A stretch of DNA of 27,216 nt from Antechinus flavipes (taxonomy: Eukaryota), in the NCBI RefSeq assembly GCF_016432865.1. It is one part of the record NC_067403.1 of this genome. The stretch is one strand, 5' to 3'. The notes beneath the pieces were generated by a model. That model was given only the letters and a program-made list of their open reading frames with translations, had not been told where the DNA came from and made no database searches. Each line of letters opens with the position of its first letter. Position 1 is the stretch's first letter. This document shows, piece after piece, positions 6,451 through 27,216 of this stretch. A program made the translations under genes and the position numbers.

Positions 6451-6469
6451 AATTATATGTATCCATGTT

Positions 6470-7164: not shown

Positions 7165-7310
7165 CCCATGTTTGAATCCCGACTCTGCACTTTCTACCCG
7201 TGTGATCTTGGGCAAGTCCCTCTGTTGCTCTCAGTTTCCCCCTGTGTAAAATGAGCAGGGTTGGGCCAGAAGGCCTCTGAAGCCTCTTCTGGTTCTCCAT
7301 TTCTGATGCT
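7165..7310 (+). mobile_element. MIR3-like SINE
   Basis: tttgaatcccgactctg...tgtgatcttgggcaagtc...ctcagtttccccctgtgtaaaatga. Confidence 0.7.
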
Positions 7311-8037: not shown

Positions 8038-8128
8038 GTAGAATGTAAGCTCCTTGAGGGCAGGAATCGCTGCTGGTCTCAGCTTTATGTCCCCAATGCC
8101 CAGATGGTTGAATAAATGAATGAATGAG
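8038..8128 (+). mobile_element. L2 LINE 3' end
   Basis: gaatgtaagctccttgagggcagg...ttgaataaatgaatgaatga. Confidence 0.75.
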
Positions 8129-8961: not shown

Positions 8962-9165
8962 TTTTTTTGGACATCCTTTGTTTTTCCGTTGCCTTCATCT
9001 CCGAATATACACCTTCCTGTCTCCTTTATGCAATAATAGCCATGCCTTGTAATAAAGATTTCAAAAGAAAAAGGAAACAAAAACAACTCAGCCGAAATAA
9101 TTCCCATATTGACTGCCTTACAGTAGATGCAATATTCCAACCCACCCCTTTCCGCCCCTTCCTGT
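8962..9165 (-). mobile_element. Old marsupial LINE-1 3' end
   Basis: Reverse complement of the same L1 3'UTR type as 1-430 (agccatgccttgtaataaaga...gatgcaatattcca). Confidence 0.55.
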
Positions 9166-10059
9166 GCCTCCCACTGCAGCCTCAGTTCTTGGGGAAAGAA
9201 GGGACTTGCAGCTCAAACCTAATTCCTTATGATTTACTTGGCTCCTCACTTCTCCAGGAAGCCTCCTCTGAAGATCTCATCGACTGCCTTTCTTTGCTCT
9301 CCTTTAGTTCCATGCACTCTGACCCTTAGAAACACACCTATTCTCAGTCTTGCCTCTTCCAACCTCCAGGCTTCCTACGGGCATAGCTATTGCTGACACT
9401 TCTGCCTCACTAGGCCCAGGAGGATTATTTGGACTCATTCTTGCCCCCCTATTTGGGTGGGAAGGCTGTCCAGTCAGACTTCTCTGTGTGACTTGTATCT
9501 GGTGGGGGTGATGGGAAAAACATGGCGTCTGAAGTCCGAGAACCTGATTTACCCGTCCATTTCTCACCTGAAAACTGTGGGGTGAGACTTCATTGCAGCT
9601 TTCAGCCCATTTCTCAGACCTAGAAAGTCCTTTCTCTGCCCCAATCCACTGACTGCCTCTTCCTCCTTTGGAATTTAGCCCCTAGCTCGCCTCCAAGCCT
9701 TGCCCGGTCAACGGCCAGCCAAGTCTTCATCTGTAGGTGTTTGAAGTCAGTGGAGGAAGTGCTTGTGTGTTTGTTAACCCATTTTGTGAGCCCGTCTTCT
9801 CCCCCCAGTTAAACTATAAGCTCACTGAGGGCAGAAAGCCTCCCATTCTGCATTTCCGCTTTTCCAGAACAGCCATCTGGCTCTGTCCACAGCAGGCGTT
9901 ATCTGTCTGACCCTGTCCTCTTGAGGAAATTTGTTTTCTCATCTAAAAATCAACCCCAAATCCCCAAGTCATGGACCAGAAGATAACAAGTCCAAATCTC
10001 CCTCCCTCCAGAGGGGTGGACCAGGGTATGGTGGCTGTTCATTGGCCGAGCCTGTGCAT

Positions 10060-10073
10060 GTTGCCATGGAAAC
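10060..10073. promoter_or_regulatory. RFX X-box
   Basis: GTTGCCATGGAAAC, a 14-bp consensus match. Confidence 0.65.
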
Positions 10074-10439
10074 AGGAGGCGGAGAAACCCTCCTGCAGAG
10101 AGATGCTGCTGAGCATCTCCCTGCGCCTCGGAAGGCCCTGGCCTGTATACGGTTTGTGAGGGGAGCACTGCATGAGAAGTAGAGGAGAGAAAGTTGCCAC
10201 CTCTGTTTATCTGTCCTTCCCATGCTGCAGCTTTCAGAGAGGTCTTGAGATGCTGGGGGAAGAAATGTCTCTTCCTCACCCCGCCCTCAACCAGAGCAAG
10301 GAAGCTGAGAGAAGGTATGGCCTGGCAACAGCCAAAGCATCGGCTGACAGACAGTGCCCTTCTATTTGTGAGGAAGAGGAAACGATGGGAGAAATCCCCA
10401 TGTGATGAATTATACACAACTTTCCCACGGGAAAAGTCC

Positions 10440-10910
10440 TTAGAACCTAAAACATAAAATGCCAGAATGGAAGGGACGTTACAAGACATAATGTAAAGTG
10501 GGAGAGCTGGGAAGGACCTCAAAACACAGACCCTAAGAACGTTTTGTGTAGACTTTCAGACTTAGGAGGTGCCTTAGAACATAGAGCATAAGATGCTATG
10601 GTGGGAACACCCAATACAGAATGCTACAGAGCCGGGAGAACGGACCCTGACAGAGCTGGAAGGGTCTTTATACCATAGAAGAGCAGAGCTTGAAGGAGCC
10701 TTGAAGGACAAAGTATGAGGCACTCTAGAATAAATACCATAGAGCTGAAGGGATCTTAGAAATGATGTAGCCCGACACCCTTCATTTACAGAGCAGGAAA
10801 CTGAAGACCCCGAGAGCCATAGCGCCTTCTTAAGGTACCCTGGTGAGTTTGTGGCTGGTAGGACCAAAATCCAGGTCTCCAGGACATTGCTCTTTCCATT
10901 AGTCTACAAT
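10440..10910 (-). mobile_element. MIR3/L3-tail-like element with about 5 degenerate tail-motif copies
   Basis: Repeated agagctggaagggaccttaga-like units, then core catttacagagcaggaaactga. Confidence 0.55.
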
Positions 10911-11971
10911 TTTGCTAAAAGGCAACTGACCCACATCAGTCACCCTGGTGGCCACCTCTAGGCAGAGATGGCTAATCCCTTGGGTCATTGTATTTCCCTG
11001 GCTGTCTTCATCTCTGTACTTGGGACAAGTTGTCTTGAAAGCTACCCGGCCTCAGAAGCGCGCTCTCCCCAGCATATCCTGGAGCGATGGAGCTGTCCAG
11101 TTGGCTATTCGTGGCCAGAGCTACAATAGGATTCTCTGGGTTCCAGTCCAGGGTGATCCCATTTCTGTAGTGAGCCAAGACCAGGAGCAAAGCAGGGATT
11201 TCGAGCCATCAAAGCATTTGGCAGGAAAAGCTGAGCTCACACTTGAAAGTGATGTGGATTCAGTGGCTCCCAGCCAGCTTTGGTCTAGAGCTTTCTGGGT
11301 ATTGGGGTTAGCTTTGGCCCTCTCGAGAGCCGTCACCTACATTCAGAGCTGCCCTGGGTCTTGAGGTGAACCACACGGCCAGTAGTGGACCGACCTTCTA
11401 GCTCTGGCCCGGCCTCATTTGCAGGGAGTTCAAGGTATGGCGGCTCTTTCTGGAGCCTTCCAGTCTGCCATCTGCCCCATCTCAAATCTCAGTCTGAGCT
11501 GGGCCTCTTGGACTTATGTTCAGTTTGTTGTGGATGCCAAAGGATGCCAGGAGGTTAACCCCCCCCAGGAGGGGCACAGCTAGCCAGGCTCTAATACCTC
11601 CCCAGGGATGTTTTGATTCTTCAAGACTCCAGGAAGCTTTAAGGCTTCCATAGAGAGATCATCGCTCTCTAGAGAAGAAGACTACCGCCCTACCTCCATT
11701 TCTCCCCAGAGAGGGTCTGCCTGGCCGATGCCCCTGAAAGTGATTGGCCCCCGTTCTTCCCTCCTTCCTGATAAGGTGGTCAGGGAGAGATGGGGAGGTC
11801 TTCCCCCAGGAACCCTCTAAAACCATTCAAGGCAGGAGCCAGGCACTGCATGGCCTGTTCTGGCTATAAAAAGCCCTTTTTGGGGAAAAAAATCATAAAG
11901 GAAGAAACCAGCCAATCCCTCCGCGATGCCATCACCTCTTCTTGGTGAATTTTCGGGGAAGGAGTGGGCGG

Positions 11972-11985
11972 GTTGCCATGGCAAC
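11972..11985. promoter_or_regulatory. RFX X-box, perfect palindrome
   Basis: GTTGCCATGGCAAC. Confidence 0.75.
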
Positions 11986-12049
11986 AGATGCGAGCTCGGC
12001 TCCGTAAAGAAGGAACCTTGATATTTTTTTTCTTTCTCTCTCTTGGTTT

Positions 12050-12080
12050 TGTGTATGTGTGTGTGTATGTGTGTGCACAC
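12050..12080. repeat. (TG)n microsatellite
   Basis: Seen directly in the sequence. Confidence 0.9.
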
Positions 12081-12131
12081 TCCACGGATTTTTTTTAGAT
12101 CTAAAGAAACCCCTCCTCTCCCTGCAGCACC

Positions 12132-12141
12132 CCAAATATGG
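12132..12141. promoter_or_regulatory. CArG box (SRF)
   Basis: CCAAATATGG matches CC(W)6GG. Confidence 0.55.
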
Positions 12142-13079
12142 AGTGGTGGAAAACCACTCACTCCTGAAGGCCAGAGAACATTCGGGAGGGCTCCAGAAGG
12201 GAGGGAAGCCCCCTTCCTAGCGTGGGGGGGCCCTCCCCCCAAAGGGGTGCATGCACTGGGGAATGGGCACTTCCCAGAGGGCAGACGGCTAATTGTAGAA
12301 ATGGGATGGGGGGAGAGTGGAGCTGGGGAAGGGGCTGAAGGAAAGGCCTGGTGTGCAGGGGTGGGGTGATCAAGGAACACGGAAGACTGAGCCGGGGGGA
12401 GGGGGGCGAGAGAAACCGGGCTTGGTACTGCAAGGGCACGTTACATAAACAGAGTCAGACCGACAGAGCCAGCCAGACAGACAGACAGGCAGATCCACAT
12501 ATGCAGAAGCACACACAGCTCCCCACACAGCTAGCTGCAGGTCTGCGGAGACAGACCAGACCCTGGAGAAGAAACACAGAGACACAGGCAGGCCCACGGA
12601 AAACTACAGAGTTCCACGCACACAGACGCGGCCCCCCACAAAGAGAGCAGGCAGACCCACACGCAGACATGGACACACATGGAGTCCCCAAAGTGGATGC
12701 ACAGAGACACATGTAAACAAACGCAGGCGCCCAAAATGGCTCCGTGCACGGCCGAGCACACATTCACATGCGTGCCCCCGTCGCCCAGCTCCCACATCTC
12801 CGTGGCATATACATATTCCCCTATGTCAGCACTAAGAGGCTTGGTGGGTACGTGCAGACGTGTTTGTTTGTGCTATTTGTGTCTGCAGCTCAAGCACTGA
12901 GCCTTCCTTCCTCCTGGATCTCGTTTTTCCAGTCTCTCGTTCCCTTCTCCTAAGAGCTTCCTTTCCTACTGGTCTCACCCCTTTTTTCCCCGAAAAACTG
13001 GGGTCCCCGCTCCTCCAGCTCGCCTAGACCGAAGGCTTCCATCCCTCAGTCCATCCAGCGCTCTCCCTCCCAGCCCAGG

Positions 13080-13280
13080 AACGGGGGTGACTCAGCTGGG
13101 GCCAGGATGACTCACTGCGACAGTATTTTTAGCCCCGGCCAGGAGCTCTCTAGCAGTGCCAGCCGCCCCCCTCCTCCTGCCTGCTATTTCTGAACCGTCA
13201 CTGGTGATATAAATAGCTCCTCTCCCACGGCCTGAAGCTGCTTCCAGGTTATTTTTGGTTCTCAGAAGTTAAAAATAACT
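13080..13280. promoter_or_regulatory. NPAS4 upstream activity-type enhancer (AP-1 x2, MEF2-like x5, half-CRE, TATA-like)
   Basis: TGACTCA at 13088 and 13108. MEF2-like sites at 13123, 13184, 13207, 13249 and 13269 (TTAAAAATAA, perfect). CGTCA at 13196. About 3.1 kb upstream of the TATA box. Confidence 0.8.
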
Positions 13281-13396
13281 CGATGAAGGTGGGAGGCCGG
13301 GGGGCTGGGGGCCAGCCTGGGAAGGAGGGAGCTTGGGGTAACTAGATCTTCTTGCCTTGAACTAAAGTTGACTAGGTTGGTTCTACCTCTCCCCCC

Positions 13397-13397
<1 letters not shown>

Positions 13398-13431
<34 letters not shown>
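13398..13431. repeat. (CA)17 microsatellite
   Basis: Seen directly in the sequence. Confidence 0.95.
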
Positions 13432-13434
<3 letters not shown>

Positions 13435-13771
13435 TCTCTCAGGACCTATTGCCCTCCCAGACTCGGACATCCCACTCTCCCAATCCCACTTCCTTATTTC
13501 CCTTCCAGAATCCAGATAACCTGCCCCCCCCCCCAGTCCCCAAGTTTGACAGGCTGCAGAGGGAGATTCCCTGAAGGTGGTGGATTTCCTAGTGTTTACA
13601 AGGTGGTGTGGGGGAAGGAGGCAGAGGCAGGAGACTTGAATGGGGGCAGCCAGGAGGGGGAGCTGCACAGACAGAAAGGCAAGTACATAAATACAGAGAA
13701 ATAGGTAGAAATGTAGCAGGAGAGGGGCACTGGCTATTCACACTGGTTTCCTCAGAGAGAGCCGAGGGATC

Positions 13772-13792
13772 TTCAGCACCATGGAGAGTGGC
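13772..13792 (+). promoter_or_regulatory. RE1/NRSE (REST site)
   Basis: TTCAGCACCATGGAGAGTGGC versus consensus TTCAGCACCnnGGACAGCGCC. Confidence 0.8.
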
Positions 13793-15245
13793 AATGAGTC
13801 TCCTTCAGTGATCCTGCCAAACAACGCTGATGGGAAATCTGGGGGTTGAGGAACATTTCCTTCCGCCATGAAACAAGTCCTAGACTGCCCCCCCACTTCT
13901 CCCATCGTGTTTCTAGGCACATCTGGAGGGGAAAACAGGACAAAAAGGGGCCAGTGAGATCAGTTGGGAGAAGAGGCTGAGGCTGACAGAGGTCATGCAG
14001 AAAGATGGAGATGGAGGGGGCAAAAATGGTTGGGGTCACAGAGACACCAAATTTGCAGCGAACCTCCCACCTTCCATCCAAACACTGAGACGGAGAGCAG
14101 AGACAAAAAGACAGAAGTATCACACCTCCCCCTCCCCTCCCCAGTGGCCTTCCACCACTGACAGCCCCTGACAGCACCACTGGAGAAGAAAGAGGGACAG
14201 AGGTACCGATGAAGGCCTCAGAGAAAATGTAGAAAAGGATAAGAAACTTTCATTGGAACCCAGGATTCCTTAGTCCACCCATAGGTGGCCCCTGCTTCTT
14301 TGTACAACCCCTTCCCCCAGTACATGCTCTTCCCATGGGGCAGTACTGAGCGATACTCTTGCCTCAGTCCACTCCCCTAATTCCTGTCTTCAGAATGGGC
14401 ATCCAGATGATTGGATTTGCTCTTCACCAAACATCAGAGTTTACATCCCACCGCCTCCCCTTCCAAAAAAGGGGAGTGCAAAGAGAAAAAAAAGCTTCCT
14501 ATGTCTAGACTCTCGGACTACTTCCTCTTCCCCCACTTCCCAGGGAAAGGGTCTGCATTCAGCATCCTGACCTCCTCTTCCTTTCCAGATCTAGGGGACC
14601 CTACACCTTCACCCTCCCAGGCCCCTGGGGACAGAACCAATTTCACCTTGAGTGGGAGATACTGTGGTCTTCCTCATTCACCTCCACCCGGGACAGGGTC
14701 TTGCAGGGAGGGACAGAGATGGAGACAAAGCAAAGCTAAGACAGAGAGGTAGAAGGAGAGACCCAGACAAGAAAAAAAAGAGTCAGAAAAAATAAATAGA
14801 ATATGACAGGTACCAATTAATACAGAGAAACTGAGTGAGAAAAGGCCCAAAGAAGAGACAGAATGATCTCTCAAGAAAGACAGAGACATTACTGGGGGGA
14901 GGGGGTGGCTTGAGAAAGAAATGGAAGACAAAGACAGAGCCAGAGACTCAGACAGGCCAAGGGGATGAGATCAGAAGAGATTGGGAGACTGAGACAAGTG
15001 AGCTGGAGAGAGCTGGGAAAAGCTTGAGGGTTGGGGGGCTGTCTGGAAGCCAGTCGGACAGACAGACAGAGAGGAGAGGGACAAGCTGCGAGCAGGGAGA
15101 GCTCCCAGAGAGAACGGGGGCTCTTTTCTTTGCGCCTCGCCCCCAGAGGCCCAGCCGCTTGGGAAAGGGGGCGGGGGAGCCTTTAAAAGCAGAGAGCTGA
15201 AGCACACAGGCCCCGCCCCGCCTGCCGCGCCAGGAGGTTTCCTGC

Positions 15246-15255
15246 CCTAATATGG
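15246..15255. promoter_or_regulatory. CArG box / serum response element
   Basis: CCTAATATGG (reverse complement CCATATTAGG), next to an Ets core TTTCCTG. Confidence 0.7.
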
Positions 15256-15666
15256 AGTTGGGATTCCCCCAGCCCCGCCCCCGCCCCCCGCCCCCGGCCC
15301 AGTGAGGCAAGGGGAGGGTGAGGGAGGGGAGGAGAAGGGCGCAAAGATGCCAAGATTGAAGCTGGGGGAAGGGGGGGATTCCTCCGGGTGGGGGAGGAGG
15401 AGCCAGCACGGACTGGAGGCAGGGATGCTTGGGTCCCATTTCTGAACCTCTAGGGTTTCTTTCTTGTGCCTCAGTTTCCATTTTTCCTCCATACCCCCGG
15501 GAACTTGTTTCGCTCTGTCCAAGGTCTGGGGACCCTCTGCGTCCAGGGGGCCGGAGAAAATCGGGGGAAGGGGAGTGCAAAGAGAAACAATCCCATCCGT
15601 CAATCAGTGCATGGGCCCCCTTGGGGGAGGGGCCTAGGGAAGAGGGACAGGGGCTCTGAAAAGCGG

Positions 15667-15680
15667 CCTACAGGGGGCGC
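15667..15680 (+). promoter_or_regulatory. Candidate CTCF site
   Basis: CCTACAGGGGGCGC, two mismatches to CCASYAGRKGGCRS. Confidence 0.45.
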
Positions 15681-16099
15681 CAGAGAACAGGTGGGAATTC
15701 CTGCTCTGGGCAAGCGAGACCCCTGCATTCCCCCATCCCCTTCCCCTCCCGGGACACTGCTTGGGGCTAGGCAGGGGCTATGGGGTCGCCGCGCAGACTC
15801 TGGGATCTGGGAGACCGTCCCCTGGCCCACGAGGCCGAGAGCAGCAGAAGCCTGGACTGGAGCGTGGGATCAGAATCGGCGTTGGGTGGGGGGGGGGAGG
15901 CCAGGGGCCCGAGGGGGCCTCGCGCAACTGCCAGAATGGCCCTTCTTCGGTTTTCCGCAGGCCCTGCACTCCAGAGCCCCCAGTCTGGCTCCTGCACGGC
16001 GGCGCTGCGCCTTGGCTCGGTCCCCTCCAGGCTCGGCCCCCTCCTTTGCTTCTCTTCTCCCCCTGCACCACCCCCCGCAATCCCCCCTCCCTCTCTCGT

Positions 16100-16262
16100 T
16101 CTACGTCATGCGGATGACGTCGGAGGCTGGGGAGGGAGGAGGAGCGGGGGCCCCCCCAGCCGGCAGCTCCCCGTGCAGCCTGCTTGGCCCGGCCCCCCGC
16201 TCCTCCCGCCCCCCTCCCCGTCCCTGAATCGAGCCCCCCACGCCCGGCTGGGGCTATATAAA
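16100..16262 (+). promoter_or_regulatory. NPAS4: NPAS4 core promoter (two CREs, GC boxes, TATA)
   Basis: TACGTCA at 16102-16108, TGACGTCG at 16115-16122, TATATAAA at 16255-16262. TSS inferred near 16287. Confidence 0.8.
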
Positions 16263-16436
16263 GCGGAGCGAGACGGGCGAGGGGGGCAGAGCTGCCAATC
16301 GGAGCCGAGAGAGGGAGAGAGAGAGAGAGACCGAGAGAGACGGGGGAGAGAGAGGAGGAAGAAGCCGAAGAAGGCGCGTCGGGGCGGGTACCCAGGTGGC
16401 CGAGGCGCCCGGGCGCGAGCTCCGCCGCCAACAGCC

Positions 16437-16611
16437 ATGTACCGCTCCACCAAGGGCGCTTCCAAGGCGCGGCGGGACCAGATCAACGCGGAGATCCGGA
16501 GCCTCAAGGAGCTGCTGCCGCTGGCCGAAGCGGACAAGGTGCGGCTCTCGTACCTGCACATCATGTCGCTAGCCTGCATCTACACCCGCAAGGGAGTCTT
16601 CTTCGCCGGAG
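16437..16611 (+). CDS. NPAS4: NPAS4 exon 1 (bHLH)
   Basis: Encodes [21 protein letters not shown]...RKGVFFAG. Kozak gccATG; donor G|GTGAGC; 175 nt. Confidence 0.98.
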
Positions 16612-16779
16612 GTGAGCGAGCCGGGGCTGGCGGAGACTGGGGGGCTCCGGGGCTGGCACTCCAGGGACCCCCCAGGCTGGGAGAGGAGGAGACCGTTCGG
16701 GAGGGAGCCGAGCAGGGAAGGCACCGGGAGCGCCAGACTTTCTCCTTGGCTCCCCGAGACCTTCCGAGCCTTCCTCGGT

Positions 16780-16800
16780 GTCAGCACCCTGGACAGGGAA
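16780..16800 (+). promoter_or_regulatory. RE1/NRSE in NPAS4 intron 1
   Basis: GTCAGCACCCTGGACAGGGAA. Confidence 0.8.
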
Positions 16801-16896
16801 GCGCCGCCGGTCTAAGCTCCCGGCCACGGGGGCGCATCCCGTCAGGAGCTCCCTTTGGCCGGGAAGCCCGAGCAGATAGAGCCGCTTGGGAGCCGG

Positions 16897-16917
16897 AGCT
16901 CTGTCCGAGGTTCTGAA
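16897..16917 (-). promoter_or_regulatory. RE1/NRSE in NPAS4 intron 1
   Basis: Minus strand TTCAGAACCTCGGACAGAGCT. Confidence 0.7.
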
Positions 16918-16977
16918 GCTGCCGACAGCGCTCGGTCTTTGGGGGGTCTGAGCGCGGAACCGGGAAGCTCGGCTGCG

Positions 16978-16998
16978 GTTGCTGTCCGCGGTCCTTAA
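16978..16998 (-). promoter_or_regulatory. Weaker RE1/NRSE in NPAS4 intron 1
   Basis: Minus strand TTAAGGACCGCGGACAGCAAC. Confidence 0.55.
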
Positions 16999-17239
16999 GC
17001 CTGCCCGGCCCGAGCTTGCTCTCCCTGGCTGGGGCATCCCCGGATCCAATCAACAGGTCCCTCGGCCAAGAGATCGGGGAGTGGGGTCAACAGGTGGGCG
17101 CGACTCCCGGGGCTGATCCACTGGGATCCCTATGGATTCCCAAAGATCAACAGCTCGCTTCTCCCTCCAGCTAGCGTCTCCTCGTCTCCCGTCTTCTGGA
17201 GCGTCCCTCCCGACTCACCCTCTTTCTCTCTCCCAGCAG

Positions 17240-17391
17240 GCGCCCCTCTGACTGGCCCAGCCGGGCTGCTCTCGGCGCAGGAGCTGGAAGACATCGTGGC
17301 GGCGCTGCCCGGGTTCCTGCTCATGTTTACGGCCGAGGGGAAGCTCCTCTATCTGTCCGACAGCGTGAGCGAGCACTTGGGCCATTCCATG
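17240..17391 (+). CDS. NPAS4: NPAS4 exon 2 (PAS-A)
   Basis: Encodes (G)[54 protein letters not shown] flanks; 152 nt. Confidence 0.97.
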
Positions 17392-17887
17392 GTGAGCGCC
17401 TTGGAGGACGGGGCGCAAGGAGGTCCCAGGGGAAAGCCCTTCCCGGGCCAGAGCCAGCCTAGGACAGCCGGGGCAGGGAAGCGAGGGAGCGTCCATTTGC
17501 AACGTTCAGAGACTGGGAAATGGGATAATGTAGCTGAGAGAGAAGGGGAGCTTGAGTCAGACAGCGGGGACTAGTTAGTGGTACGTGACTTTAGTGAATG
17601 CAGAACTCCCCCTCGCGGGGCCAGGGTATCCACACCTTTGGCCGGAAGGCTTGGGCTAACCGAGCCTGCGGTCCTTTAGTTGTAGCTCTCGCTCCATTCT
17701 GAGTGGTACCCATGGTAATTACGTGCATCCATGGGACATGGGGTCGAGTGCCGGGGCTTAAGGAACTGGGAAGCCATAGCCGGGCATCACAGAGGAGCTG
17801 AGGCTCCCGGCGGCCCCGAGTGGCTGGGGGCCGTGCTTAGACTCTTCCTCCATTCGCTGATGGTCTTTCCTCCCCCTTTCTTCACAG

Positions 17888-17990
17888 GTGGATCTGGTTG
17901 CCCAGGGTGACAGCATCTACGATATCATTGATCCCGCCGACCACCTCACTGTCCGCCAGCAGTTGACTCTGCCCTCCCTGCCTGACACCG
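17888..17990 (+). CDS. NPAS4: NPAS4 exon 3
   Basis: Encodes [34 protein letters not shown]; 103 nt. Confidence 0.97.
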
Positions 17991-18106
17991 GTGAGTACTT
18001 TGCTTCTTGTTCTTTGCCTTCTCTTTCCTTGGCTGAGACTTTTTCCTTAAGCATTTCCTCTACAATAACACCCACTCACCCCACGACTCCCTTCTCTCTC
18101 ACTCAG

Positions 18107-18374
18107 ATCGCCTTTTCCGATGCCGATTCAATACTTCCAAGTCCCTGAGGCGCCAGAGCGCGGGCAACAAGCTCGTGCTCATCCGGGGCCGTTTTCATCC
18201 CCACCCCCCTGGAGCCTACTGGGCGGGGAACCCCGTCTTCACGGCCTTCTGCGCCCCTCTCGATCCCCGAGCCCGTCCCGGACCAGGCTGCGGCCCCGGG
18301 CTGGCCTCCATCTTCTTGGCCGTGTTTCAGAGCCGCCACGCCAAGGACCTCGCCCTGCTGGATGTCTCCGAGAG
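18107..18374 (+). CDS. NPAS4: NPAS4 exon 4
   Basis: Encodes (D)[29 protein letters not shown]...[10 protein letters not shown]; 268 nt. Confidence 0.97.
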
Positions 18375-18608
18375 GTGAGTTTGCCCTGCTTGGGGCAGGA
18401 GAAGTAAAACAGAGCTTCTGCTCTTGGGGATGGCACGTCTGCCCTGCAGGGATCATGGGAGAAGCAGGGGCTCGAAGGAGTAGAAGGCTGGGCTGTAGCA
18501 AAAGGAGTTGGCGTCCGGGAGGGAGCAAGCCGGGGTTCAAGGGCTCAGGATGCTTGGGTGCCATGATGGGGGAGCAGAAAGCTGACCTCCTGCCTTTGCC
18601 CTCTCTAG

Positions 18609-18718
18609 TGTCCTAGTCTACCTGGGCTTTGAGCGCAGCGAGCTGGTCTGTAAATCATGGTATGGACTTCTGCACCCCGAGGACCTGGCCCACGCCTCGG
18701 CCCAGCACTACCGCCTGC
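18609..18718 (+). CDS. NPAS4: NPAS4 exon 5 (PAS-B)
   Basis: Encodes (S)[36 protein letters not shown]; 110 nt. Confidence 0.97.
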
Positions 18719-19226
18719 GTGAGTGTCCCAGTGCATCCGTGGGGCAGGAGCAGACACGAGGGAGGCAGGGCCAGGACCAATCAGGGATAAGCGTGAGAGG
18801 GGAGGACCAGGTCAAGGTCCCGGAGAGCCTAGCAGGGAGCCCCCGAGGAAAGGCAGCGTGGGGCAGTGGGGAGTGCCGGATTTGGAGTCAGAGGCTGGGA
18901 CCTGAGGTCCACGGCCTCCACTTGCACCCAGTGACTTCGGCCCGGTTATTCGGGACCTCGGCTCCCCCGCCTGCAGAATGAGACCTCGATTGGTGACTGC
19001 GAAGGTCTCCTCTGACTCCAAATCTGTCAGTCCAGGACCTCGCGTGGCCAGTTCCCGGCAACCCTGGGAGTTAGAATTCCAGGGATGGGGTGTGTGTAGG
19101 GGTGGGAGTTGAGTGCAACCCCCCGGAGAGGTAGGCGAGCTTTAGGGTTAGAGCGGGCTGTTAGGGCGCTGGGCACGGCGGTGGCCAGCGGGCACCGGGC
19201 TAACCCTCGGGCTCCTCTTCCCCTAG

Positions 19227-19362
19227 TGGCTGACGGTGGTGATGTTCAGGCGGAAATGGTAGTGAGGCTGCAGGCCAAGGCCGGAGGCTGGGTATGGATC
19301 TACTCCCTGATGCACCCCGAGGGCTCCGATGGCCCCATCACTGCCAACAACTACCCGATCAG
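19227..19362 (+). CDS. NPAS4: NPAS4 exon 6 (PAS-B/PAC)
   Basis: Encodes (L)[44 protein letters not shown]; 136 nt. Confidence 0.97.
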
Positions 19363-19387
19363 GTGAGCCGGAGTCCCAGATCCGAGG

Positions 19388-19438
19388 GGGCAGGGGGGCC
19401 GCCTGTTGTCAGGGCAGGGGGGCCGCCTGTTGTCAGGG
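19388..19438. repeat. Perfect 24-bp tandem duplication in NPAS4 intron 6
   Basis: (GGGCAGGGGGGCCGCCTGTTGTCA)x2 plus GGG. Confidence 0.95.
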
Positions 19439-19473
19439 TGGGCTCCTCACCCCGCTTCTCTCCTTCCCCCCAG

Positions 19474-20887
19474 CGACTCGGAAGCCTGGAGCCTTCGCCA
19501 GCAGCTCAGCTCCGAAGACGCCCACCTGGCGTATGTCCTGGGCACTGCGGCCGCGCCGGCTGCGTTCCCAGGCAGCCTCCTCTCCCCGGCCCAGTGTGCG
19601 AGCCCCGACCCGACCTTCCCCCCGGCCTTTGGGGGTCCCCGAAGCACCATCTTCCCCGCTGGCCCGGAACTGGCACCCATTCCCTCCGGAGAGCAGCTGT
19701 CGCAGCCCCCCAAGGAGATGGACTTCAATTACCTGGCCTTCCCCCCGCGCCCCGAGTCCACCTTCCAAGGGGACCTGTGCAAAGACTTTGTGTGCACCCC
19801 GCCGTACACGCCCCACCAGCCCGGGGGCTGCGCCTTCCTCTTCGGCCTCCAGGAGCCCTTCCAGCCCCACCTCCCCGCGCCTTCCGGCTCTGGCGCGGAG
19901 CAGCTGCCCCCCGGCGCCGGCATCTTCCCCGAGCAGCTGACCCCCAGCAGCGCCACGTTCCCCGAGCTGGCCGGCCCCGTTCCGGGCCAGCTGACGGACG
20001 CCCCGGCCCAGACCTACGAAGACCAGCTGCCTCCCTGCGGCCCGGCTTTCCCAGAGCAGTTGCTGCCCGGCGCCGCCACCTTCCAGGAGCAGCTGGCCAG
20101 CCCCGGCCAAGCCCAACTGACCCCGCCCAGCACGGCTTTCCCGGCTCACACGGCCAGCCCCGGCCGGACCTTCCCGGACCAGCCGAGCCCGACCCCCACC
20201 AAGCCCTACTTCCCCCAAGACGGCTGCAGTTTTCTCTATGAGAAGTTGCCTCCCAGCCCTAACAGTCCTGGTAATGGGGACTGCACTCTCCTGGCTCTGG
20301 CCCAGCTCCGGGGCCGCTCTCCGTGGACGTGCCCCTGGTGCCCGACGGCCTGCTCACCCCGGAGGCCTCCCCGGTCAAACAGAGTTTCTTCCATTACTCG
20401 GAAAAGGAGAGGAATGAGCTCGACCGCCTCATCCGGCAGATCAGCCAGCTGGCCCAGGGCCTGGACTGCCCCTTCCCGGCGGAGCCTGGGGCGGAGGGGC
20501 TCGAGCCCCTGGGCCAGGCTCTCTCCTTCCCGGGGGCTGGTCCCCCGCTGTTCGGCCTGGACCCCAAGTCCTGGAAGAGCCAGGACCTGGCTTTCTTGGA
20601 TGCCCCCGAGGCCCAGTTCCTGGAAGAGAAGTCCCCGGAAGACATCTTCATGGGCCTCTCCGCCCCGGCGCCCCAGGGGGACTGGGGCCCGGGGGGTCCT
20701 GAGACCTCGGGCCCAGGGGGGGCCCCGTCGCCCTGCACCGACCTGTCCCCGGAAGACCACAGCTTCCTGGAGGACCTGGCCGCCTACGAACCCGACTTTG
20801 AGACAGGTGTCTCAGCGTTCCCCTGTGATGGATGTACCGATGAGTTGTATCAACTCCAGAGTCAAGTTCAAGACAGCTTCCATGATG
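19474..20887 (+). CDS. NPAS4: NPAS4 exon 7 (transactivation region), with an apparent 1-nt deletion at ~20310-20315
   Basis: (S)[11 protein letters not shown]...LALAQLRG reads in one frame. [20 protein letters not shown]...QVQDSFHD reads in the -1 frame. Donor G|GTGAGC. Confidence 0.93.
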
Positions 20888-21186
20888 GTGAGCGGGAGCC
20901 GAGAGACCCCCGGGCCCTGGGAGCGGGAGGGGAGGGAAGATGGGGAAACCGAGGCTGGCGGCCCCGGCCCAAACGAACAGAACCCTCGGTGCGGGCCCTG
21001 GCGGCGGATCCTGGGTGGGGAGGGGTCTCCCGCCTTTCTCCGCCGGAGTTCTGGCTTGTCACTCGCGGGCAGCATGGGGGAGCCGGGCTCCACGAGTCCT
21101 TTTCAGCTTCTCGGGGCTCGCGGGGGCGGGAGGGGGCGGCCTGAGCCCGAGCTCTCTGACCCCGCGTCTCGTTTTCTCTTTCCCAG

Positions 21187-21215
21187 ATGGAAGTGGAGGG
21201 GAACCAACGTTCTGA
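21187..21215 (+). CDS. NPAS4: NPAS4 exon 8 coding part
   Basis: cccag|AT GGA AGT GGA GGG GAA CCA ACG TTC TGA encodes (D)GSGGEPTF*. Spliced CDS is 2387 nt, one short of 2388 (795 aa). Confidence 0.95.
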
Positions 21216-21928
21216 ATAAGTCTGTGACTTAACGTCGTCGAGTATGGCATATTGTCATCATGGAGTGGAGATGTTCTCCACCACCCCGGAACTTCCGTGC
21301 GCTCCTTGGGGGCTTGGAGGGGATGCGTCCGATCCCTCCCACCCTGAGGAGGGGAAGGGGGGAGGAGGGGTGGTGGGAAGAAGGGGAAGGGGATTTATTT
21401 TTAGAATCAAGAGACTTTGAGCAATCCTAGTTTCCATCTCAATCTGTATTCACTCGTAGTGAGTTTCCTTGAATGGGATTCCATACAGAGAATGGGGGAG
21501 TCACCGCTTCCCTTCCATGCTGCCCGAGGCCTGGGGGGACTTCTCCACCCCCGGGGCCGTCGGTCCCGGGCTTCCGTGGGGGAAAAGGCCGGCCCCGGGC
21601 TAGCCTGCGCCCCGTGGGGGCCCTTGACACTCACGTAGAATTGTCTACACTCCAGTAACAGGATTTCAATTCCTCTGCACTCGCCGCCAGCGCGGCTCTC
21701 CTGTGACTTTTGCGCCCTGCGCCTGGGGTGGGGGGCGTGAAGCGACTCTATCGTTTCTTTCCGATGCAGGAAGACAGATCTGCCGTCACGCCGTGTGTGA
21801 GTGCGTGTGCACGCGAGCATGCGTGTGTGTGTGCGCCCGAGCACGCCCGTGTGCGAGCGGGCAGGCGGGCCCCGGGCCCCCGTGCAGTGAATCTCGTGGT
21901 GCTGTGTCGACTTTGTAACCAACTTTAT

Positions 21929-21934
21929 AATAAA
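21929..21934 (+). terminator. NPAS4 polyadenylation signal
   Basis: AATAAA with downstream U/GU-rich tract (ccttttttgt...gtgttgtttg). Confidence 0.8.
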
Positions 21935-22018
21935 GTCCGGTTCGCCTTTTTTGTAGCCCTCGTGTTGTTTGCTGATGGAGAAGGGGGGGGGCCCAGGAGT
22001 CCTTCCCCAGGCTGGCGG

Positions 22019-22032
22019 GCACTAGGGGGCGG
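22019..22032 (+). promoter_or_regulatory. Candidate CTCF site between the convergent 3' ends
   Basis: GCACTAGGGGGCGG, one mismatch to the core. Confidence 0.55.
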
Positions 22033-23200
22033 GCAGCCGCGGACGAGAAGAGCTGAAGAGCCGGGGTCTGGCTCTCTTGCTCCCCTGACCTCGTGGCCCC
22101 GAAGCCCCCATCAGGGTCCCCAAATTCCCTCGGACACGTCCCCACCCTGAGTGAGGCTCGGCTGCCACCCGCCCCTGCGGGGGAAGGATTAGGACGCGCA
22201 GACGAGCTTTGGGGACCTTGGGGAGAGCTAAAGGTGCCCCAGCACTGGGCCCACAAGGGGCAAAGGGCCGGAGACGGACCCTCTCTCGGGACCTTCCAGC
22301 AGCCAAAGGCTGCTCAGCGCCCTCAGTCCAGGGGCCGAAGCCTGGGGACTTCCCCGTTCCAGAACACTCAGGATCTAAGGCCTCGGAGCAGGCGCCTTCA
22401 TTCCCTGAGCACCTGCTTGGGGGGGGGGGGATGGAGACTTTCCCAAACAGAGGCTACGACTCCAGGAGTCCGAGGCCTCCCTCTGGGCCCTACCCAGAAG
22501 CCTCCTCCCCGTGTCCAAGCCACCAAACGGGTGGAGAGGACCCGGGGCACCCCTGGAGACCACATCCTTTCTACCTCCTGGAAAGGGGAAGGATAGTCAC
22601 CAGGGGTGAGGGTGGGGGAGGCCACTCACCTTCCAGCTGGAGACAGCGCAGCTTGGCCCCGCCCCTGATCCTGGGGGGGAGGAAGAGAAGCCCCCAATTC
22701 ACAGCTGAGTCCCCTCAGTTCTAAACCCTTCTCAGAAGAAGCCCCCAGACTCTCCTATCCCCCCACGGCCCTCCAGCAGCTCCCAGATGCCAGGGTCCGG
22801 TGCTGGCAAAGCCAATGGGCATCTTAGGGGACCCCATCTGACCATCCACCTGCGCTCCGGGGGCTCCGGGGCCTCTGCGGCCCCTCCCTCAGCTCTGTCC
22901 GGCCACGTTCCTGGCACTGAAACACGAGGCCAGACCCCGCCGGGTCATCAGGGAGAAAGCATCGGAGAGATTTGAACCCAGGTCTCCCACCCAGGGCCAA
23001 TATTTTTTCTTTGTCCCTCAATGGGTCTTAGAGAAGAAGGCAAATGAGCCCTGGGGCCCAGCCAGAGGGGTGGGGAGCACAGCTGCCAGGGTCCCATCCC
23101 CCGGGGGATTTCCCGCGAGGGCCCTTTTCCCCACACCTTCGTCCCATCATCCCCTGAGCAGCAGACGGACAAGCAGAACAACGTGACAAACAATTTAATA

Positions 23201-23206
23201 TTTATT
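23201..23206 (-). terminator. MRPL11 polyadenylation signal
   Basis: Minus-strand AATAAA, directly followed by ATTAAA (23194-23199), about 120 nt after the stop. Confidence 0.8.
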
Positions 23207-23325
23207 GGGGTCTTCAGCCCTTTAAATTAGAGACGGACACGACACAGACAGGGCAGGGTCCGGGGCGCCCATTGGCCCCTCGGGTGCGGGCAGTCGCTGC
23301 CCGGGCGGAGCGGGGGAGGCCGGGC

Positions 23326-23434
23326 TCACTTCTTGGCCGCCTCCGCCTTGGCGGCTTCGGCGTCGGCGAGGGCCTGCGCGGCCAGGAACCGGGTCCGCTC
23401 CTCCTGGAAGGCCGCCAGCTGCTCGGCGCTGAGG
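23326..23434 (-). CDS. MRPL11: MRPL11 exon 5
   Basis: Encodes (D)LSAEQLAAFQEERTRFLAAQALADAEAAKAEAAKK*; 109 nt. Confidence 0.95.
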
Positions 23435-23586
23435 CTGCGGGGGGGAAGAGGAAGGTCAGGCCTCCGAGCCCGGCCCAGCCCCTGTCCCTGAAAGAACCGA
23501 GCCCCGGCCCGCTCACCCCGAGTCCTCCCAGGCTCCCTGCACAGTGCTCGCTCTCCCAGGATCCAGGGCCCCTCCCCCCCACTCAC

Positions 23587-23746
23587 TCCTTCACCACGCG
23601 GATGCCCAGCGAGCGGGCGCTCCCGAGGATGGAACGGACCACGGAGGACAGGGGGACGTCCTGCAGAGCGAAGGCCTTGTCCTGAGCCTTCACTCGGGCG
23701 ATCTCGTACACGTGCTTCAAGGAGATGAGCCCGGCCACCTCGTGCC
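23587..23746 (-). CDS. MRPL11: MRPL11 exon 4
   Basis: Encodes (G)[52 protein letters not shown]; 160 nt. Confidence 0.97.
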
Positions 23747-23826
23747 CTGGAAGGGAGGGAGCTGCCTCAGCCGCCGCCCCCAGGGGCCCGACCTCTCCCC
23801 CTCCCCAGATGCCTGCCCCCCCCCAC

Positions 23827-23920
23827 CTGTGCGCCTGGCCCCCTTTTCTATGCCGGCGGCCGCCTTCAGGAAGTAGGAGACGGTGGGCTGACTGATCTTG
23901 AGCTCGAAGGTGCGATCGGG
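23827..23920 (-). CDS. MRPL11: MRPL11 exon 3
   Basis: Encodes [31 protein letters not shown]; 94 nt. Confidence 0.97.
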
Positions 23921-24132
23921 CTGGAGAGAAGAGAAGGAGCCAGAGGGGGGTCACCCCCTGCTGGGGGGGGCAGGGACCCGGGGCCCAGGGGTGGGGGCAG
24001 GGACCCAGGGTGGGGAGGAAGCGGCCCCGGGAGGCCGGATTCCCCTCGGAGGGGAGGAGACACAGTCAGAGCCAGGGGCGGGGGGGAAAGGGCTGTACCA
24101 GAACACCCCTAAGCGGGCCCTGGGCCCCCCAC

Positions 24133-24228
24133 CTTCACGATGATCTTGGTGGGCAGGGGGATCCCCTCTTTGATGTCCTTGGTCTTCTCGTTGAACTCCT
24201 TGCAGAACTGGCTGATGGCCAGGCCTTG
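24133..24228 (-). CDS. MRPL11: MRPL11 exon 2
   Basis: Encodes [32 protein letters not shown]; 96 nt. Confidence 0.97.
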
Positions 24229-24800
24229 CTGCGGGAGAAGGGGCGTCTGAGTGGTCAGGGACCACTGACCCCCCTCTCACCCCAGGGCCCGGATAAGCCC
24301 CCCCCGGTCAGCAGACAGCCCCATCCCCAGCCATCCTGCCACAACTGCCAGGGCTTGGGGTCCACTGGCACCATGGGGTCATCCCCAATCCCCAAGGGAG
24401 TAGACGCCCCTTCCTATCAGCACAAGGAGGGGCTGGAAAACCCCACCTTGGGGTCCCTTCCAGCTCCAGACCTAGGAGCCTAAGGGGCTCACACAGAGCA
24501 GGAGACACCCTAGTGGCCGGGGGAGGTGGCGGCCTGGGAAGGACCTTATGCTGGAGTTCCCCTCTAAAGAGTTCTGCTTCTTTGGGGGCTTCAGTTTGCC
24601 GATCTGCAAAGTGGGCGCAATGCCCACCCCGGGTGCGTGACAATTTATCATGTCATTGTTGTTAAATGTCACGCCAGAGTGCCGCAAGTTATAGGTCGGA
24701 GGTGGTTCTCGAACTCGCGACCTCAGTCTCAGCTGGACCAGCGAGGGGAGGGGAGGGGAGGGAAGAGGAGTAAAGAGGGATTGCGAGAGTTCTTCCCCAG

Positions 24801-24912
24801 GGCGCACGCGTGGTGCCCTCCACAGGCAACACGCTCTCTCTGCGCTTGCGCAGCACCCCCTAACTCACATTAATTTCCCCCCCCACCCCGCATTCCCCGC
24901 TACGCATGCGCA
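24801..24912. promoter_or_regulatory. NRF1-like motif cluster in MRPL11 intron 1
   Basis: GGCGCACGCGTG at 24801, TGCGCTTGCGCA at 24841, TACGCATGCGCA at 24901. Confidence 0.6.
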
Positions 24913-24936
24913 CCCTAGCCTGACTCCCTCTCCTAC

Positions 24937-25059
24937 CTGACCCAAGATAGGTCCTAGAGGCGGCCCCGGCATCGCTTGGCCCGCGCGGACGATGGACCGG
25001 ATGACGCCGCTGCCCTCGAGCTTCCGAACGGAGCGCGTGGCCCGGCTGAGCTTCGACAT
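24937..25059 (-). CDS. MRPL11: MRPL11 exon 1 (mitochondrial ribosomal protein L11)
   Basis: Encodes [41 protein letters not shown]; donor CAG|GTAGGA. Total CDS is 582 nt, 193 aa, intact. Confidence 0.97.
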
Positions 25060-25632
25060 GGCGCGGGCTGTGGGGTGTGACCGAGTGCAGAAGAGGAAGG
25101 AAGAGCGGGAGTCTGGCCCCAAATCCGCCCGCTCTCACCGCTTTCACGAGCCGAACATGGGCGCCACCATATTGGGTTAAAGGTCACGGGTCCTCGCGGA
25201 GCTCTTTGGCTGCTTCCCTTTCAACCCAATCGGAAGAAAGGGATACTGAAAAGGGGAAGCAGACACATATCCGTGGAAGTCTAGGAGTTCCCGCCTCTTG
25301 TTCGCCATTCACAGACGAGGAAAGATTGCAAAAAAGTTCTCTTTTCCACAGGCTATAATGAAGGCAGCTGTGAGAGAGGGGCCTAATGTCTCGAAGAGCA
25401 TCTTGGAACATGTAGTTTCAAATCAAGCTCTTGTTTTTTGAGGCAGAAATTACGCCATGCTTTGGCGCCATCCTGTGGTGTCGAGGCAGCAGAACATATT
25501 TTTGCAGCTTTGAACTCCAATTCGGAGTCTGCGATTCTCCCCCCAAAAGTCACCACCTCCTAGATTGAAGCACCCTTAGCAAAAAATTATCTCCCTTGTA
25601 AAATGAGCTTAATTAGTGTTAACCCCAATCCA

Positions 25633-25760
25633 CGCAGTGGATGGAGCCCCGGTCCTGGAGTCAGGAGGACCTGAGTTCAAATCTGACCTCAGACACTTAA
25701 TACTTACAAGCTGTGTGACCCTGGGGAAGTCACTTAACCCCAGTTGTCTCCAAAAAAAAA
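25633..25760 (+). mobile_element. WSINE1-like SINE, slightly 5'-truncated
   Basis: cgcagtggatggagccccggtcctggagtcaggaggacctgagttcaaatc...cacttaaccccagttgtctcc plus poly(A). Confidence 0.85.
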
Positions 25761-26075
25761 GAATCATTATATATAAAGTACTTTACAAACCTTTAATAAT
25801 ATAAATGAATAAATAAATGACAATATAAGTAAATGAAATAAATAAATAAAAACAAGCATTTTATTTTACAAACTTTTAATAATATAAATAAATAAAATAA
25901 ACGATAATTAAATAAATGACATAAACAAATCACACAAATAAAAATAGAATCATTTATGTATTTTACAAACTTTTAATAATATAAATAAATAGAATAAATG
26001 ATAATTAAGTAAACGAAGTAAACAAATCATATAAATAAATAAAATTTAATATTATAAATAATATAAATAGAATTT
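25761..26075. repeat. AT-rich degenerate tandem repeat (~83-97 bp period, 3+ units)
   Basis: tttacaaac(c/t)tttaataatataaat begins at 25782, 25865 and 25962. Confidence 0.85.
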
Positions 26076-26454
26076 TCAGCTATTGCAATTCATAGAAACC
26101 TAGGAGGTAGAGCTGCAAGCTGATCTCAGAAATAACATTCATTTCCCGCTTCTGGGCCTTTGCACAAGCTGTTTCCTGTGCCTCTAATTCTCTTTCTTCT
26201 TTCCTCTGCCTCTTAGAATTCTGAGTTGGGCTCTACTGCCCCCCCCCATCTGACTTCTGGTTCCTTCCCTTCCAGGCCTCCACCTCAAAACTGCCTCCTT
26301 CCTCTGTATTTTGTTTGGGTTCTATGTGTGCATATCATATAGAGAGGAGAGGTTAAGGAAGATACTCATTCCCTTCTACTGGGTCCCAGTTATGTCTCCC
26401 CTTTTTTCTTTTTTCCCCCATCTTTTCTGCCCCTTTTCTCTAGAGAAGTAATTT

Positions 26455-26650
26455 GGGGCAACTCGGAGACACAGTGGATACTCCAATGAAATTAGGGAGA
26501 TCCAAATTCAAATTCAGCCGCAGACATTTACTCCCCGTGTCACTTGCCTGGCAAGTCATTTAGCCCCTGTTTGCCTCAGTTTCCCATCTGAAAAAATGGC
26601 TAGAAAACGACCTCTCCCTCCCAGGACTGTTATGAAATGCCACATGAAAA
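26455..26650 (+). mobile_element. MIR-like CORE-SINE
   Basis: ggcaagtcatttagcccctgtttgcctcagtttcccatctgaaaaaatgg. Confidence 0.7.
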
Positions 26651-26751
26651 TTAGTCATACCCTCTTATAACAATCATTTCTCTTTTAGGGACAACATAAT
26701 GGCCCTCACATTCCTGTGATGTTCTCTACAATTTTTATGCAGTTTATGTTT

Positions 26752-26880
26752 GTGTTTTTTTTTTCCCTGAGGCAATTAGGGTTAAGTGACTTGCACAGGG
26801 TCATACAGTCTCTGAGACTGGATTTGAACTCAGGATCTCCTGACCCCAGGGCTCTAGCCACTGCACCATCTAGCTGCCCC
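26752..26880 (-). mobile_element. WSINE1-like SINE with internal deletion
   Basis: Reverse strand ggggcagctagatggtgcagtggctagagccc...gagttcaaatcc...cacttaaccctaattgcctc plus poly(A). Confidence 0.85.
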
Positions 26881-26911
26881 TATGCATTTTTTAAAAATCT
26901 TGCAACAATTC

Positions 26912-27108
26912 CTTTTTTTAGCTTTTAATTTTCAAAAATAAATGCATATAGATAGTTTTCAACATTCACCCCTACAAAACCTTGTGTTCCAAAATTTTTC
27001 CCTCCTTTCCCCCCACCCTAGAAGCAAGCAATCCAGTATAGGTTTAACATGTGCAATTCTTCTAAATATATTTTCACATTTATCGTACTGCACAAGGAAA
27101 ATCAGATC
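26912..27108 (-). mobile_element. Marsupial LINE-1 3' end
   Basis: Reverse strand attgcacatgttaaacctatactggattgcttgc...gaatgttgaaaactatct...aaaattaaaagctaaaaaaa. Confidence 0.8.
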
Positions 27109-27216
27109 GGGGCAGCCAGGTGGTGCAGTGGCTAGAGCACCAGCCCTGAAGTCAGGAAGACTGGAGTTCAAATCTGGTCTCAGACACTTAACACTTCCTA
27201 GCTGTGTGACTGGGCA
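27109..27216 (+). mobile_element. WSINE1-like SINE (cut by the window edge), abutting or inserted in the L1
   Basis: ggggcagccaggtggtgcagtggctagagcacc (A box)...ggagttcaaatc (B box). Confidence 0.85.

What the first reader, a model, noticed from the sequence alone, without database searches (positions are those of the whole stretch)
20306..20325. One-base frameshift in NPAS4 exon 7 (LRG|PLSVDV)
Seen: CTC CGG GGC CGC TCT CCG TGG reads LRGRSPW, while the conserved [10 protein letters not shown] continues in the -1 frame (CCG CTC TCC GTG). One G or C is missing from GGGGCC at 20310-20315, at codon ~595. The spliced CDS is 2387 nt, not a multiple of 3. Both flanks look constrained, with no other lesions. 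Most likely a homopolymer or consensus error; if real, it is an allele or lineage lacking the acidic C-terminal activation region.
Basis: partly seen in the sequence, partly recalled or inferred. Interest (0 to 1): 0.8.

Follow-up and report, generated by a model that had tools for sequence, protein, structure and literature searches.

The report
One-base gap in NPAS4, likely error
The brain gene NPAS4 in this marsupial assembly lacks one G from a run of five, which breaks its reading frame; this is most likely a sequencing-consensus mistake, not a real loss, but the read-level test could not be run.

Summary
The window carries an eight-exon NPAS4 gene of a dasyurid marsupial. In exon 7 the frame changes after Gly595, and the CDS to the native stop is 2387 nt.

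Two Tasmanian devil assemblies, a dunnart and a brushtail possum all read a run of five G at this site. The window has four G (20310-20313). This is the only length difference in the 1415-nt exon. All seven introns have GT-AG boundaries.

Downstream in the old frame, the window's lineage shows 2 synonymous changes, no amino-acid changes and no stops over 177 codons. A real break would therefore be very young.

The pattern of sequencing runs fits the Antechinus flavipes reference. That assembly was built from PacBio continuous long reads with wtdbg2 and one Pilon round, a method known to leave homopolymer deletions. This scan's earlier, unchecked notes list a dozen or more similar one-base deletions in other conserved genes of the same genome, though not at this locus.

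My odds are about 0.87 consensus error, 0.09 real allele, and 0.03 fixed loss. The decisive test was not done.

If the break were real, the protein would lose its C-terminal activation region and a mapped nuclear export signal.

The parts
16437..16611 (+). NPAS4 exon 1 (ATG, bHLH)
   Evidence: 59/59 aa identical to devil NPAS4. Pfam bHLH_NPAS4 scores 113 bits against a cut-off of 27. Donor is GTGAGC.
17240..17391 (+). NPAS4 exon 2
   Evidence: tblastn to P0001; AG/GT borders.
17888..17990 (+). NPAS4 exon 3
   Evidence: tblastn to P0001; AG/GT borders.
18107..18374 (+). NPAS4 exon 4
   Evidence: tblastn to P0001, 96% identity; AG/GT borders.
18609..18718 (+). NPAS4 exon 5 (PAS)
   Evidence: 37/37 aa identical to devil. 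Weak PAS_3 and PAS_11 hits on this exon alone. Borders.
19227..19362 (+). NPAS4 exon 6
   Evidence: tblastn to P0001; borders.
19474..20887 (+). NPAS4 exon 7: 1414 nt here, 1415 nt in devil and dunnart
   Evidence: Three-way alignment shows one gap in the window and none in the others. Acceptor is CCCCCCAG and donor GTGAGC.
20310..20313 (+). Run of four G where relatives have five; this is the site of the frame break, in codon 595/596
   Evidence: Devil (two assemblies), dunnart and brushtail possum all read CGGGGGCC. The window reads CGGGGCC.
20297..20325 (+). Counterpart of the rat NPAS4 export signal LAQLRGPLSV, split by the break
   Evidence: Translations. In rat NPAS4, residues 591-600 are an active NES and residues 593-622 a putative NLS (PMC6065191).
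20314..20887 (+). Rest of exon 7 in the ancestral frame (C-terminal activation region), intact but out of frame
   Evidence: 173 of 176 compared codons are identical to devil, with no stops. On the window's lineage there are 2 synonymous and 0 nonsynonymous changes. Codons touching 20741-20783 were left out of the counts.
21187..21215 (+). NPAS4 exon 8 up to the native TGA (21213-21215)
   Evidence: Acceptor is TTCCCAG. The exon reads (D)GSGGEPTF-stop, as in all marsupial NPAS4.
21217..21219 (+). TAA that ends the literal (shifted) reading, 4 nt past the native stop and in the last exon
   Evidence: The literal spliced product is 796 aa: 595 native residues plus 201 shifted residues rich in R, S and P.

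Best explanation
The gene is an ordinary, functional NPAS4. The assembly's consensus dropped one G from a five-G run (CCGGGGGCC written as CCGGGGCC) in the very GC-rich exon 7. The animal's own DNA most likely has five G and encodes the usual 795-aa protein. Shown here: the lesion is a one-base homopolymer contraction, everything else in the gene is intact, and the downstream codons are still under constraint. Inferred: the window comes from the Antechinus flavipes reference, which was built from PacBio continuous long reads with wtdbg2 and polished once with 100-bp short reads, and this route left the deletion uncorrected.
For: (1) Two devil assemblies, the dunnart and the brushtail possum all have G5 at the site, and only the window has G4. 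The run has therefore been kept across roughly 60 My. (2) This is the only indel in the 1415-nt exon 7. All seven introns are GT-AG, and the start and stop are in place. (3) Over 177 downstream codons in the old frame, the window's lineage has 2 synonymous changes, 0 nonsynonymous changes and no stop or indel. About 6-13 nonsynonymous changes would be expected if the region had been unconstrained for the whole lineage, giving P(0) between 0.002 and 1.5e-6. (4) The C-terminal region is nearly invariant across marsupials. (5) The runs table fits the A. flavipes genome paper: two samples of the best-matching organism plus two sister species in one 2021 study, and a third sister species in a 2020 study. 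That assembly used 100x PacBio reads, canu correction, wtdbg2, and one Pilon round with 50x 100-bp BGISEQ reads. From general knowledge, this route leaves residual homopolymer deletions, most of all in GC-rich DNA, and GC here is 0.68. (6) As a lead only: this scan's notes on the same genome list apparent one-base deletions in many conserved genes, including PIAS3, TTC31 (three), AFTPH, STK36, ISOC2, CACNA1F, ZNF646, CRYBG1, ACP7 and omega-globin. That is far more than a wild animal should carry. (7) Precedent: another long-read devil assembly also has indels in this exon, and its NPAS4 is labelled LOW QUALITY PROTEIN.
Against: No read was seen at the site, so the claim rests on priors and indirect signs. 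One Pilon round with 50x reads should fix most isolated homopolymer errors, so an uncorrected one needs poor local short-read support, and I did not show that. Within this 10.5-kb locus, the window's lineage has no significant excess of one-base deletions over the devil lineage (15:5 against 16:11, Fisher p = 0.35). The species assignment is an inference from coded run tables. A rooted tree puts the window-devil split at about 0.6 of the dasyurid crown depth, which fits neither antechinus nor quoll cleanly. If the source were a HiFi assembly, the error prior would be much lower.
Confidence: 0.87

Rival explanations
1. A real, young loss-of-function allele carried by the sequenced individual (heterozygous or rare in the population) and picked into the collapsed assembly. 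Replication slippage on the G run removed one G. The mRNA would escape nonsense-mediated decay because the new stop lies in the last exon. The product would be a 796-aa protein with intact bHLH-PAS domains, a broken export signal and a basic R/S/P-rich tail in place of the acidic activation region.
For: Short G runs do mutate by slippage. The untouched downstream frame is what a very young allele would look like. The literal reading stays open to a stop in the last exon. Small dasyurids are reported to be much more heterozygous than the devil (PMC9290055).
Against: The C-terminal region is under strong constraint across marsupials. In human cell assays, truncated NPAS4 lost all transcriptional activity (PMC7987981). 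The prior for such an allele in one constrained gene is far below the per-gene rate of apparent one-base deletions noted in this genome.
Confidence: 0.09
2. A fixed, lineage-specific frameshift. This species, or its genus, makes an NPAS4 without the C-terminal activation region.
For: Only the letters of the assembly themselves.
Against: Zero amino-acid changes and no further indel or stop across 177 downstream codons limit any unconstrained period to less than about a quarter to a half of the lineage. The region is conserved from opossum to dasyurids. The gene is otherwise intact.
Confidence: 0.03
3. The four-G sequence is real, and the frame is recovered during expression by a -1 ribosomal shift or polymerase slippage on the G run.
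For: A -1 shift at CGG-GGC would give the conserved downstream frame.
Against: C CGG GGC is not a slippery heptamer of the X XXY YYZ kind. Four G is too short for known transcriptional slippage. All relatives encode the protein in one frame. This rests on general knowledge and the sequence; no structure test was run.
Confidence: 0.01

Closest known systems
NPAS4 of the Tasmanian devil (XP_003774131.1, P0001) and the fat-tailed dunnart (XP_074131488.1, P0115)
   Same: The eight-exon layout is the same, and MRPL11 lies downstream on the opposite strand. Exons 1 and 5 are identical in protein. Exon 7 matches devil at 268/279 residues upstream and 173/176 downstream of the break.
   Different: The window has one G fewer in the G5 run of exon 7, so the literal CDS is 2387 nt rather than 2388 nt and changes frame after Gly595.
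Assembly-derived frame breaks annotated as 'LOW QUALITY PROTEIN', for example devil NPAS4 KAM8967937.1 (P0116) from assembly GCA_048593225.1
   Same: Same gene and same GC-rich exon 7. Indels at G/C-rich spots appear in a long-read assembly while the species' other assembly is in frame.
   Different: That case has a 5-base and a 1-base insertion, which together add 6 bases. Here there is a single 1-base deletion, and no annotated protein of the window's genome turned up in the collections.
Truncating human NPAS4 variant 170X (PMC7987981)
   Same: [quoted passage not shown]
   Different: 170X also destroys the PAS domains and ARNT2 pairing. The break here, if real, would leave bHLH-PAS whole, so the product could still pair and might act as a dominant negative. 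That last point is inference.

Membership tests
NPAS4 (bHLH-PAS transcription factor) orthologue | NPAS4-type bHLH domain at the N-terminus | tested here: met
   Pfam PF23183 bHLH_NPAS4 scores 113 bits (cut-off 27) on exon 1. The exon is 59/59 identical to devil.
NPAS4 (bHLH-PAS transcription factor) orthologue | PAS domains in exons 2-6, collinear with known NPAS4 | tested here: met
   tblastn to devil NPAS4 gives 90-100% identity over residues 59-314. Single exons alone give only weak PAS_3/PAS_11 hits. The full devil protein carries PF08447 and PF14598.
NPAS4 (bHLH-PAS transcription factor) orthologue | Conserved gene neighbourhood (MRPL11 downstream, opposite strand) | tested here: met
   The window aligns end to end with the devil and dunnart loci, which hold the Ribosomal_L11 gene after NPAS4.
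NPAS4 (bHLH-PAS transcription factor) orthologue | C-terminal activation region read in the same frame as the N-terminal part | tested here: not met
   The literal sequence shifts frame after Gly595. I read this as an artefact, so the gene is still filed as NPAS4.
Unitary pseudogene | Several lesions and relaxed constraint (dN/dS near 1) after the first break | tested here: not met
   There is one lesion only. On this lineage, the 177 downstream codons show 0 nonsynonymous and 2 synonymous changes.
Long-read consensus (homopolymer) error | One-base length change in a homopolymer | tested here: met
   G5 in four other assemblies, G4 here.
Long-read consensus (homopolymer) error | Reads of the same individual disagree with the assembly | not testable with these tools
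No dasyurid ORFs from run assemblies are in the protein collection.
Long-read consensus (homopolymer) error | Source assembly made by an error-prone route | tested here: inconclusive
   The run pattern fits the A. flavipes project, whose assembly used PacBio CLR, wtdbg2 and one Pilon round. The species is inferred, not shown, and the tree depth is ambiguous.

The most novel reading that the evidence does not exclude
The four-G sequence is real in the animal. A carnivorous marsupial, probably an antechinus (a genus known for stress-driven male die-off), would then carry an NPAS4 allele that keeps DNA binding and ARNT pairing. The allele would lose the acidic activation region and split a mapped nuclear export signal. 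Such a product could act as a natural dominant-negative form of an activity-dependent brain transcription factor.
Probability: 0.12. Interest if true: 0.6.

Novelty: not a real feature. Interest (0 to 1): 0.12.

Why it matters
If this is an artefact, as I judge, the value is practical. The gene should be annotated as intact NPAS4. The site also adds to a growing list of one-base deletions suggesting that this assembly needs further polishing before anyone infers gene loss from it. If it were real, it would be a natural separation-of-function allele of a key activity-dependent neuronal transcription factor: bHLH-PAS intact, activation domain and export signal gone. That would be of interest for neurobiology and, in an antechinus, for stress physiology.

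Tried and rejected
I did not call it again.

(2) I looked for ORFs called on run assemblies of dasyurids that span the site. Searches with the exon-7 ORF and with devil residues 480-735 found none, so that route is closed. I left the third protein search unused because it was unlikely to help.

(3) I tested whether the window's lineage has an excess of one-base deletions at this locus. It does not, at 15:5 against 16:11, p = 0.35.

(4) I tried to place the species with a rooted tree. The relative depth was about 0.6, which is ambiguous between antechinus and quoll.

(5) No supplements of the genome paper are held. The paper gives no base-accuracy figure, only BUSCO 92.4%.

(7) I rejected programmed frameshifting and transcript slippage on sequence grounds.

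(8) Earlier notes gave no follow-up that checked a frameshift of this genome against reads.

Full report
**Observation.** The window reads CTC CGG GGC CGC TCT CCG TGG at 20306-20326.
- In the frame that carries the upstream part of exon 7, this gives ...[19 protein letters not shown]...
- The frame one base back gives [36 protein letters not shown]...
- tblastn with Tasmanian devil NPAS4 (P0001, 795 aa) follows one frame up to Gly595 and the other from Pro596.

**What the gene is.** The upstream half of the exon-7 ORF finds NPAS4 of the devil at 94% identity, then the brushtail possum at 79%, then eutherians.
- Exon 1 hits the Pfam NPAS4 bHLH model at 113 bits.
- I set all exon borders on canonical sites: exons at 16437-16611, 17240-17391, 17888-17990, 18107-18374, 18609-18718, 19227-19362, 19474-20887 and 21187-21215. 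Every intron is GT...AG.
- The CDS to the native TGA (21213-21215) is 2387 nt, against 2388 nt in the devil.
- The window aligns end to end with the devil locus L001 and the dunnart locus L002. Both have the mitochondrial ribosomal protein L11 gene after NPAS4 on the other strand.

**Which base is missing.**
- The dunnart reads CAG CTC CGG GGG CCG CTT. The devil (two assemblies) reads CAG CTG CGG GGG CCG CTC. The brushtail possum reads CAG CTC CGG GGG CCA CTC.
- The window reads CAG CTC CGG GG- CCG CTC.
- The lesion is therefore a contraction of a five-G run to four G (20310-20313). That run is conserved at the DNA level between dasyurids and a possum.
- Exon 7 is 1415 nt in devil and dunnart and 1414 nt here, with no other gap in any of the three.

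**Signature of selection.** I assigned changes to lineages using the dunnart as outgroup.
- Downstream of the break, in the ancestral frame, the window's lineage has 2 synonymous and 0 nonsynonymous changes over 177 codons. Codons touching 20741-20783 were left out. There is no stop and no further indel.
- Had the region been free of constraint for the whole lineage, 6-13 amino-acid changes would be expected, giving P(0) between 0.002 and 1.5e-6. The 95% bound on an unconstrained period is about a quarter to a half of the lineage.
- Across marsupials the C-terminal 200 residues are almost invariant.
- Only 1 of the 20 window-private one-base events in the 10.5-kb alignment falls in the 23% that is exon, against 4.5 expected. 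Exon indels are therefore normally removed here.

These results rule out an old pseudogene. They leave an artefact or a very young mutation.

**What the literal sequence would make.**
- The shifted frame has no stop in exon 7. After splicing it ends at a TAA (21217-21219), 4 nt past the native stop and in the last exon.
- The product would be 796 aa: 595 native residues plus 201 residues rich in Arg, Ser and Pro. No nonsense-mediated decay would be expected (general knowledge).
- The break lies inside the counterpart of rat NPAS4 591-LAQLRGPLSV-600, an experimentally active nuclear export signal. It also overlaps a putative import signal at residues 593-622 (PMC6065191).
- The break removes the C-terminal activation domain. 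Truncated human NPAS4 lost all reporter activity (PMC7987981).

**Where the window probably comes from.**
- The runs that hold the stretch best are two samples of one organism (share 0.96 and 0.92), in a 2021 study that also holds two related organisms (0.77 and 0.60).
- A third related organism (0.77-0.65) has several samples in a 2020 study. Three more distant organisms tie at 0.30-0.31.
- This matches the Antechinus flavipes genome project. That project sequenced two A. flavipes individuals plus A. argentus and A. arktos, and A. stuartii came from an earlier 2020 study. Its PacBio reads are at CNGB rather than SRA.
- That assembly has seven chromosomes, which matches the scan's seven pieces.
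- It was built from 100x PacBio reads corrected with canu and assembled with wtdbg2, then polished once with Pilon using 50x 100-bp BGISEQ reads.
- From general knowledge, that route leaves residual, deletion-biased homopolymer errors, above all where GC is high and short reads are thin. GC here is 0.68.

The species assignment remains an inference. A rooted tree places the window-devil split at about 0.6 of the dasyurid crown depth, which does not decide between antechinus and quoll. The quoll reference is a HiFi assembly, for which the error prior would be much lower.

**A lead on the base rate.** The scan's earlier notes on this same genome list apparent one-base deletions in coding exons of many conserved genes. 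Examples are PIAS3, TTC31 (three), AFTPH, STK36, ISOC2, CACNA1F, ZNF646, CRYBG1, ACP7 and omega-globin.
- None of these notes was checked against reads, and I did not test them.
- Even so, a dozen or more such hits in 624 windows is far above what a wild animal should carry, and it is what an under-polished long-read consensus gives.
- Taken at face value, a few per cent of genes of this size would be hit by error. That compares with roughly a tenth of a per cent or less for a real frameshift allele in a constrained gene. Both figures are my rough estimates, not measurements.
- The scan did not note this NPAS4 locus before.
- As a precedent, a second long-read devil assembly also carries indels in exon 7, and its NPAS4 is labelled LOW QUALITY PROTEIN.

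**The test that failed.** I did not call the tool again.
- The later protein query stopped at devil residue 735. The Rfam and Pfam calls skipped those places. The selection counts left them out.
- Look-ups of whole relatives' proteins were made by stored id.
- Local scripts aligned whole loci. One of them printed a short stretch of devil sequence from the homologous place.
- No ORFs from run assemblies of dasyurids exist in the protein collection, so there was no second route to read-level evidence.

**Verdict.**

| Explanation | Probability |
|---|---|
| Dropped G in the consensus | about 0.87 |
| Real young allele in the sequenced animal | about 0.09 |
| Fixed lineage change | about 0.03 |
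| Recoding during expression | about 0.01 |

The recoding figure is low because C CGG GGC is not a slippery heptamer and four G is too short for polymerase slippage.

The gene should be treated as intact NPAS4. The finding is of low interest unless reads show four G.

Noticed in passing
L003:5100-5215 (devil assembly GCA_048593225.1) against L001:7100-7215: A second Tasmanian devil assembly carries a 5-base and a 1-base insertion about 110 nt apart in NPAS4 exon 7, relative to mSarHar1.11. Its annotated protein is labelled LOW QUALITY PROTEIN.
   Followed up: partly
window 20314-21219, frame of the literal reading: The shifted frame stays open for 201 codons in this GC-rich exon and ends only 4 nt past the native stop. 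The literal product is therefore 796 aa, almost the normal length. Length checks and ORF finders would not flag the break.
   Followed up: yes
window 13416-23960: Using the dunnart as outgroup, the window's lineage has 15 one-base deletions and 5 insertions, and the devil lineage has 16 and 11. The deletion bias is not significant (p = 0.35). Several of the window's deletions are contractions of G or C runs (15562, 22004, 23052).
   Followed up: yes
window about 23250-27216, minus strand: By alignment with the devil and dunnart loci, the mitochondrial ribosomal protein L11 gene (MRPL11) starts just after NPAS4 on the opposite strand. I did not check its exons for frame breaks.
   Followed up: no
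window 1-13400: I did not study the upstream half of the window beyond a composition profile and an Rfam scan, which gave no match. There is a GC peak of 0.69 at 2001-3000.
   Followed up: no
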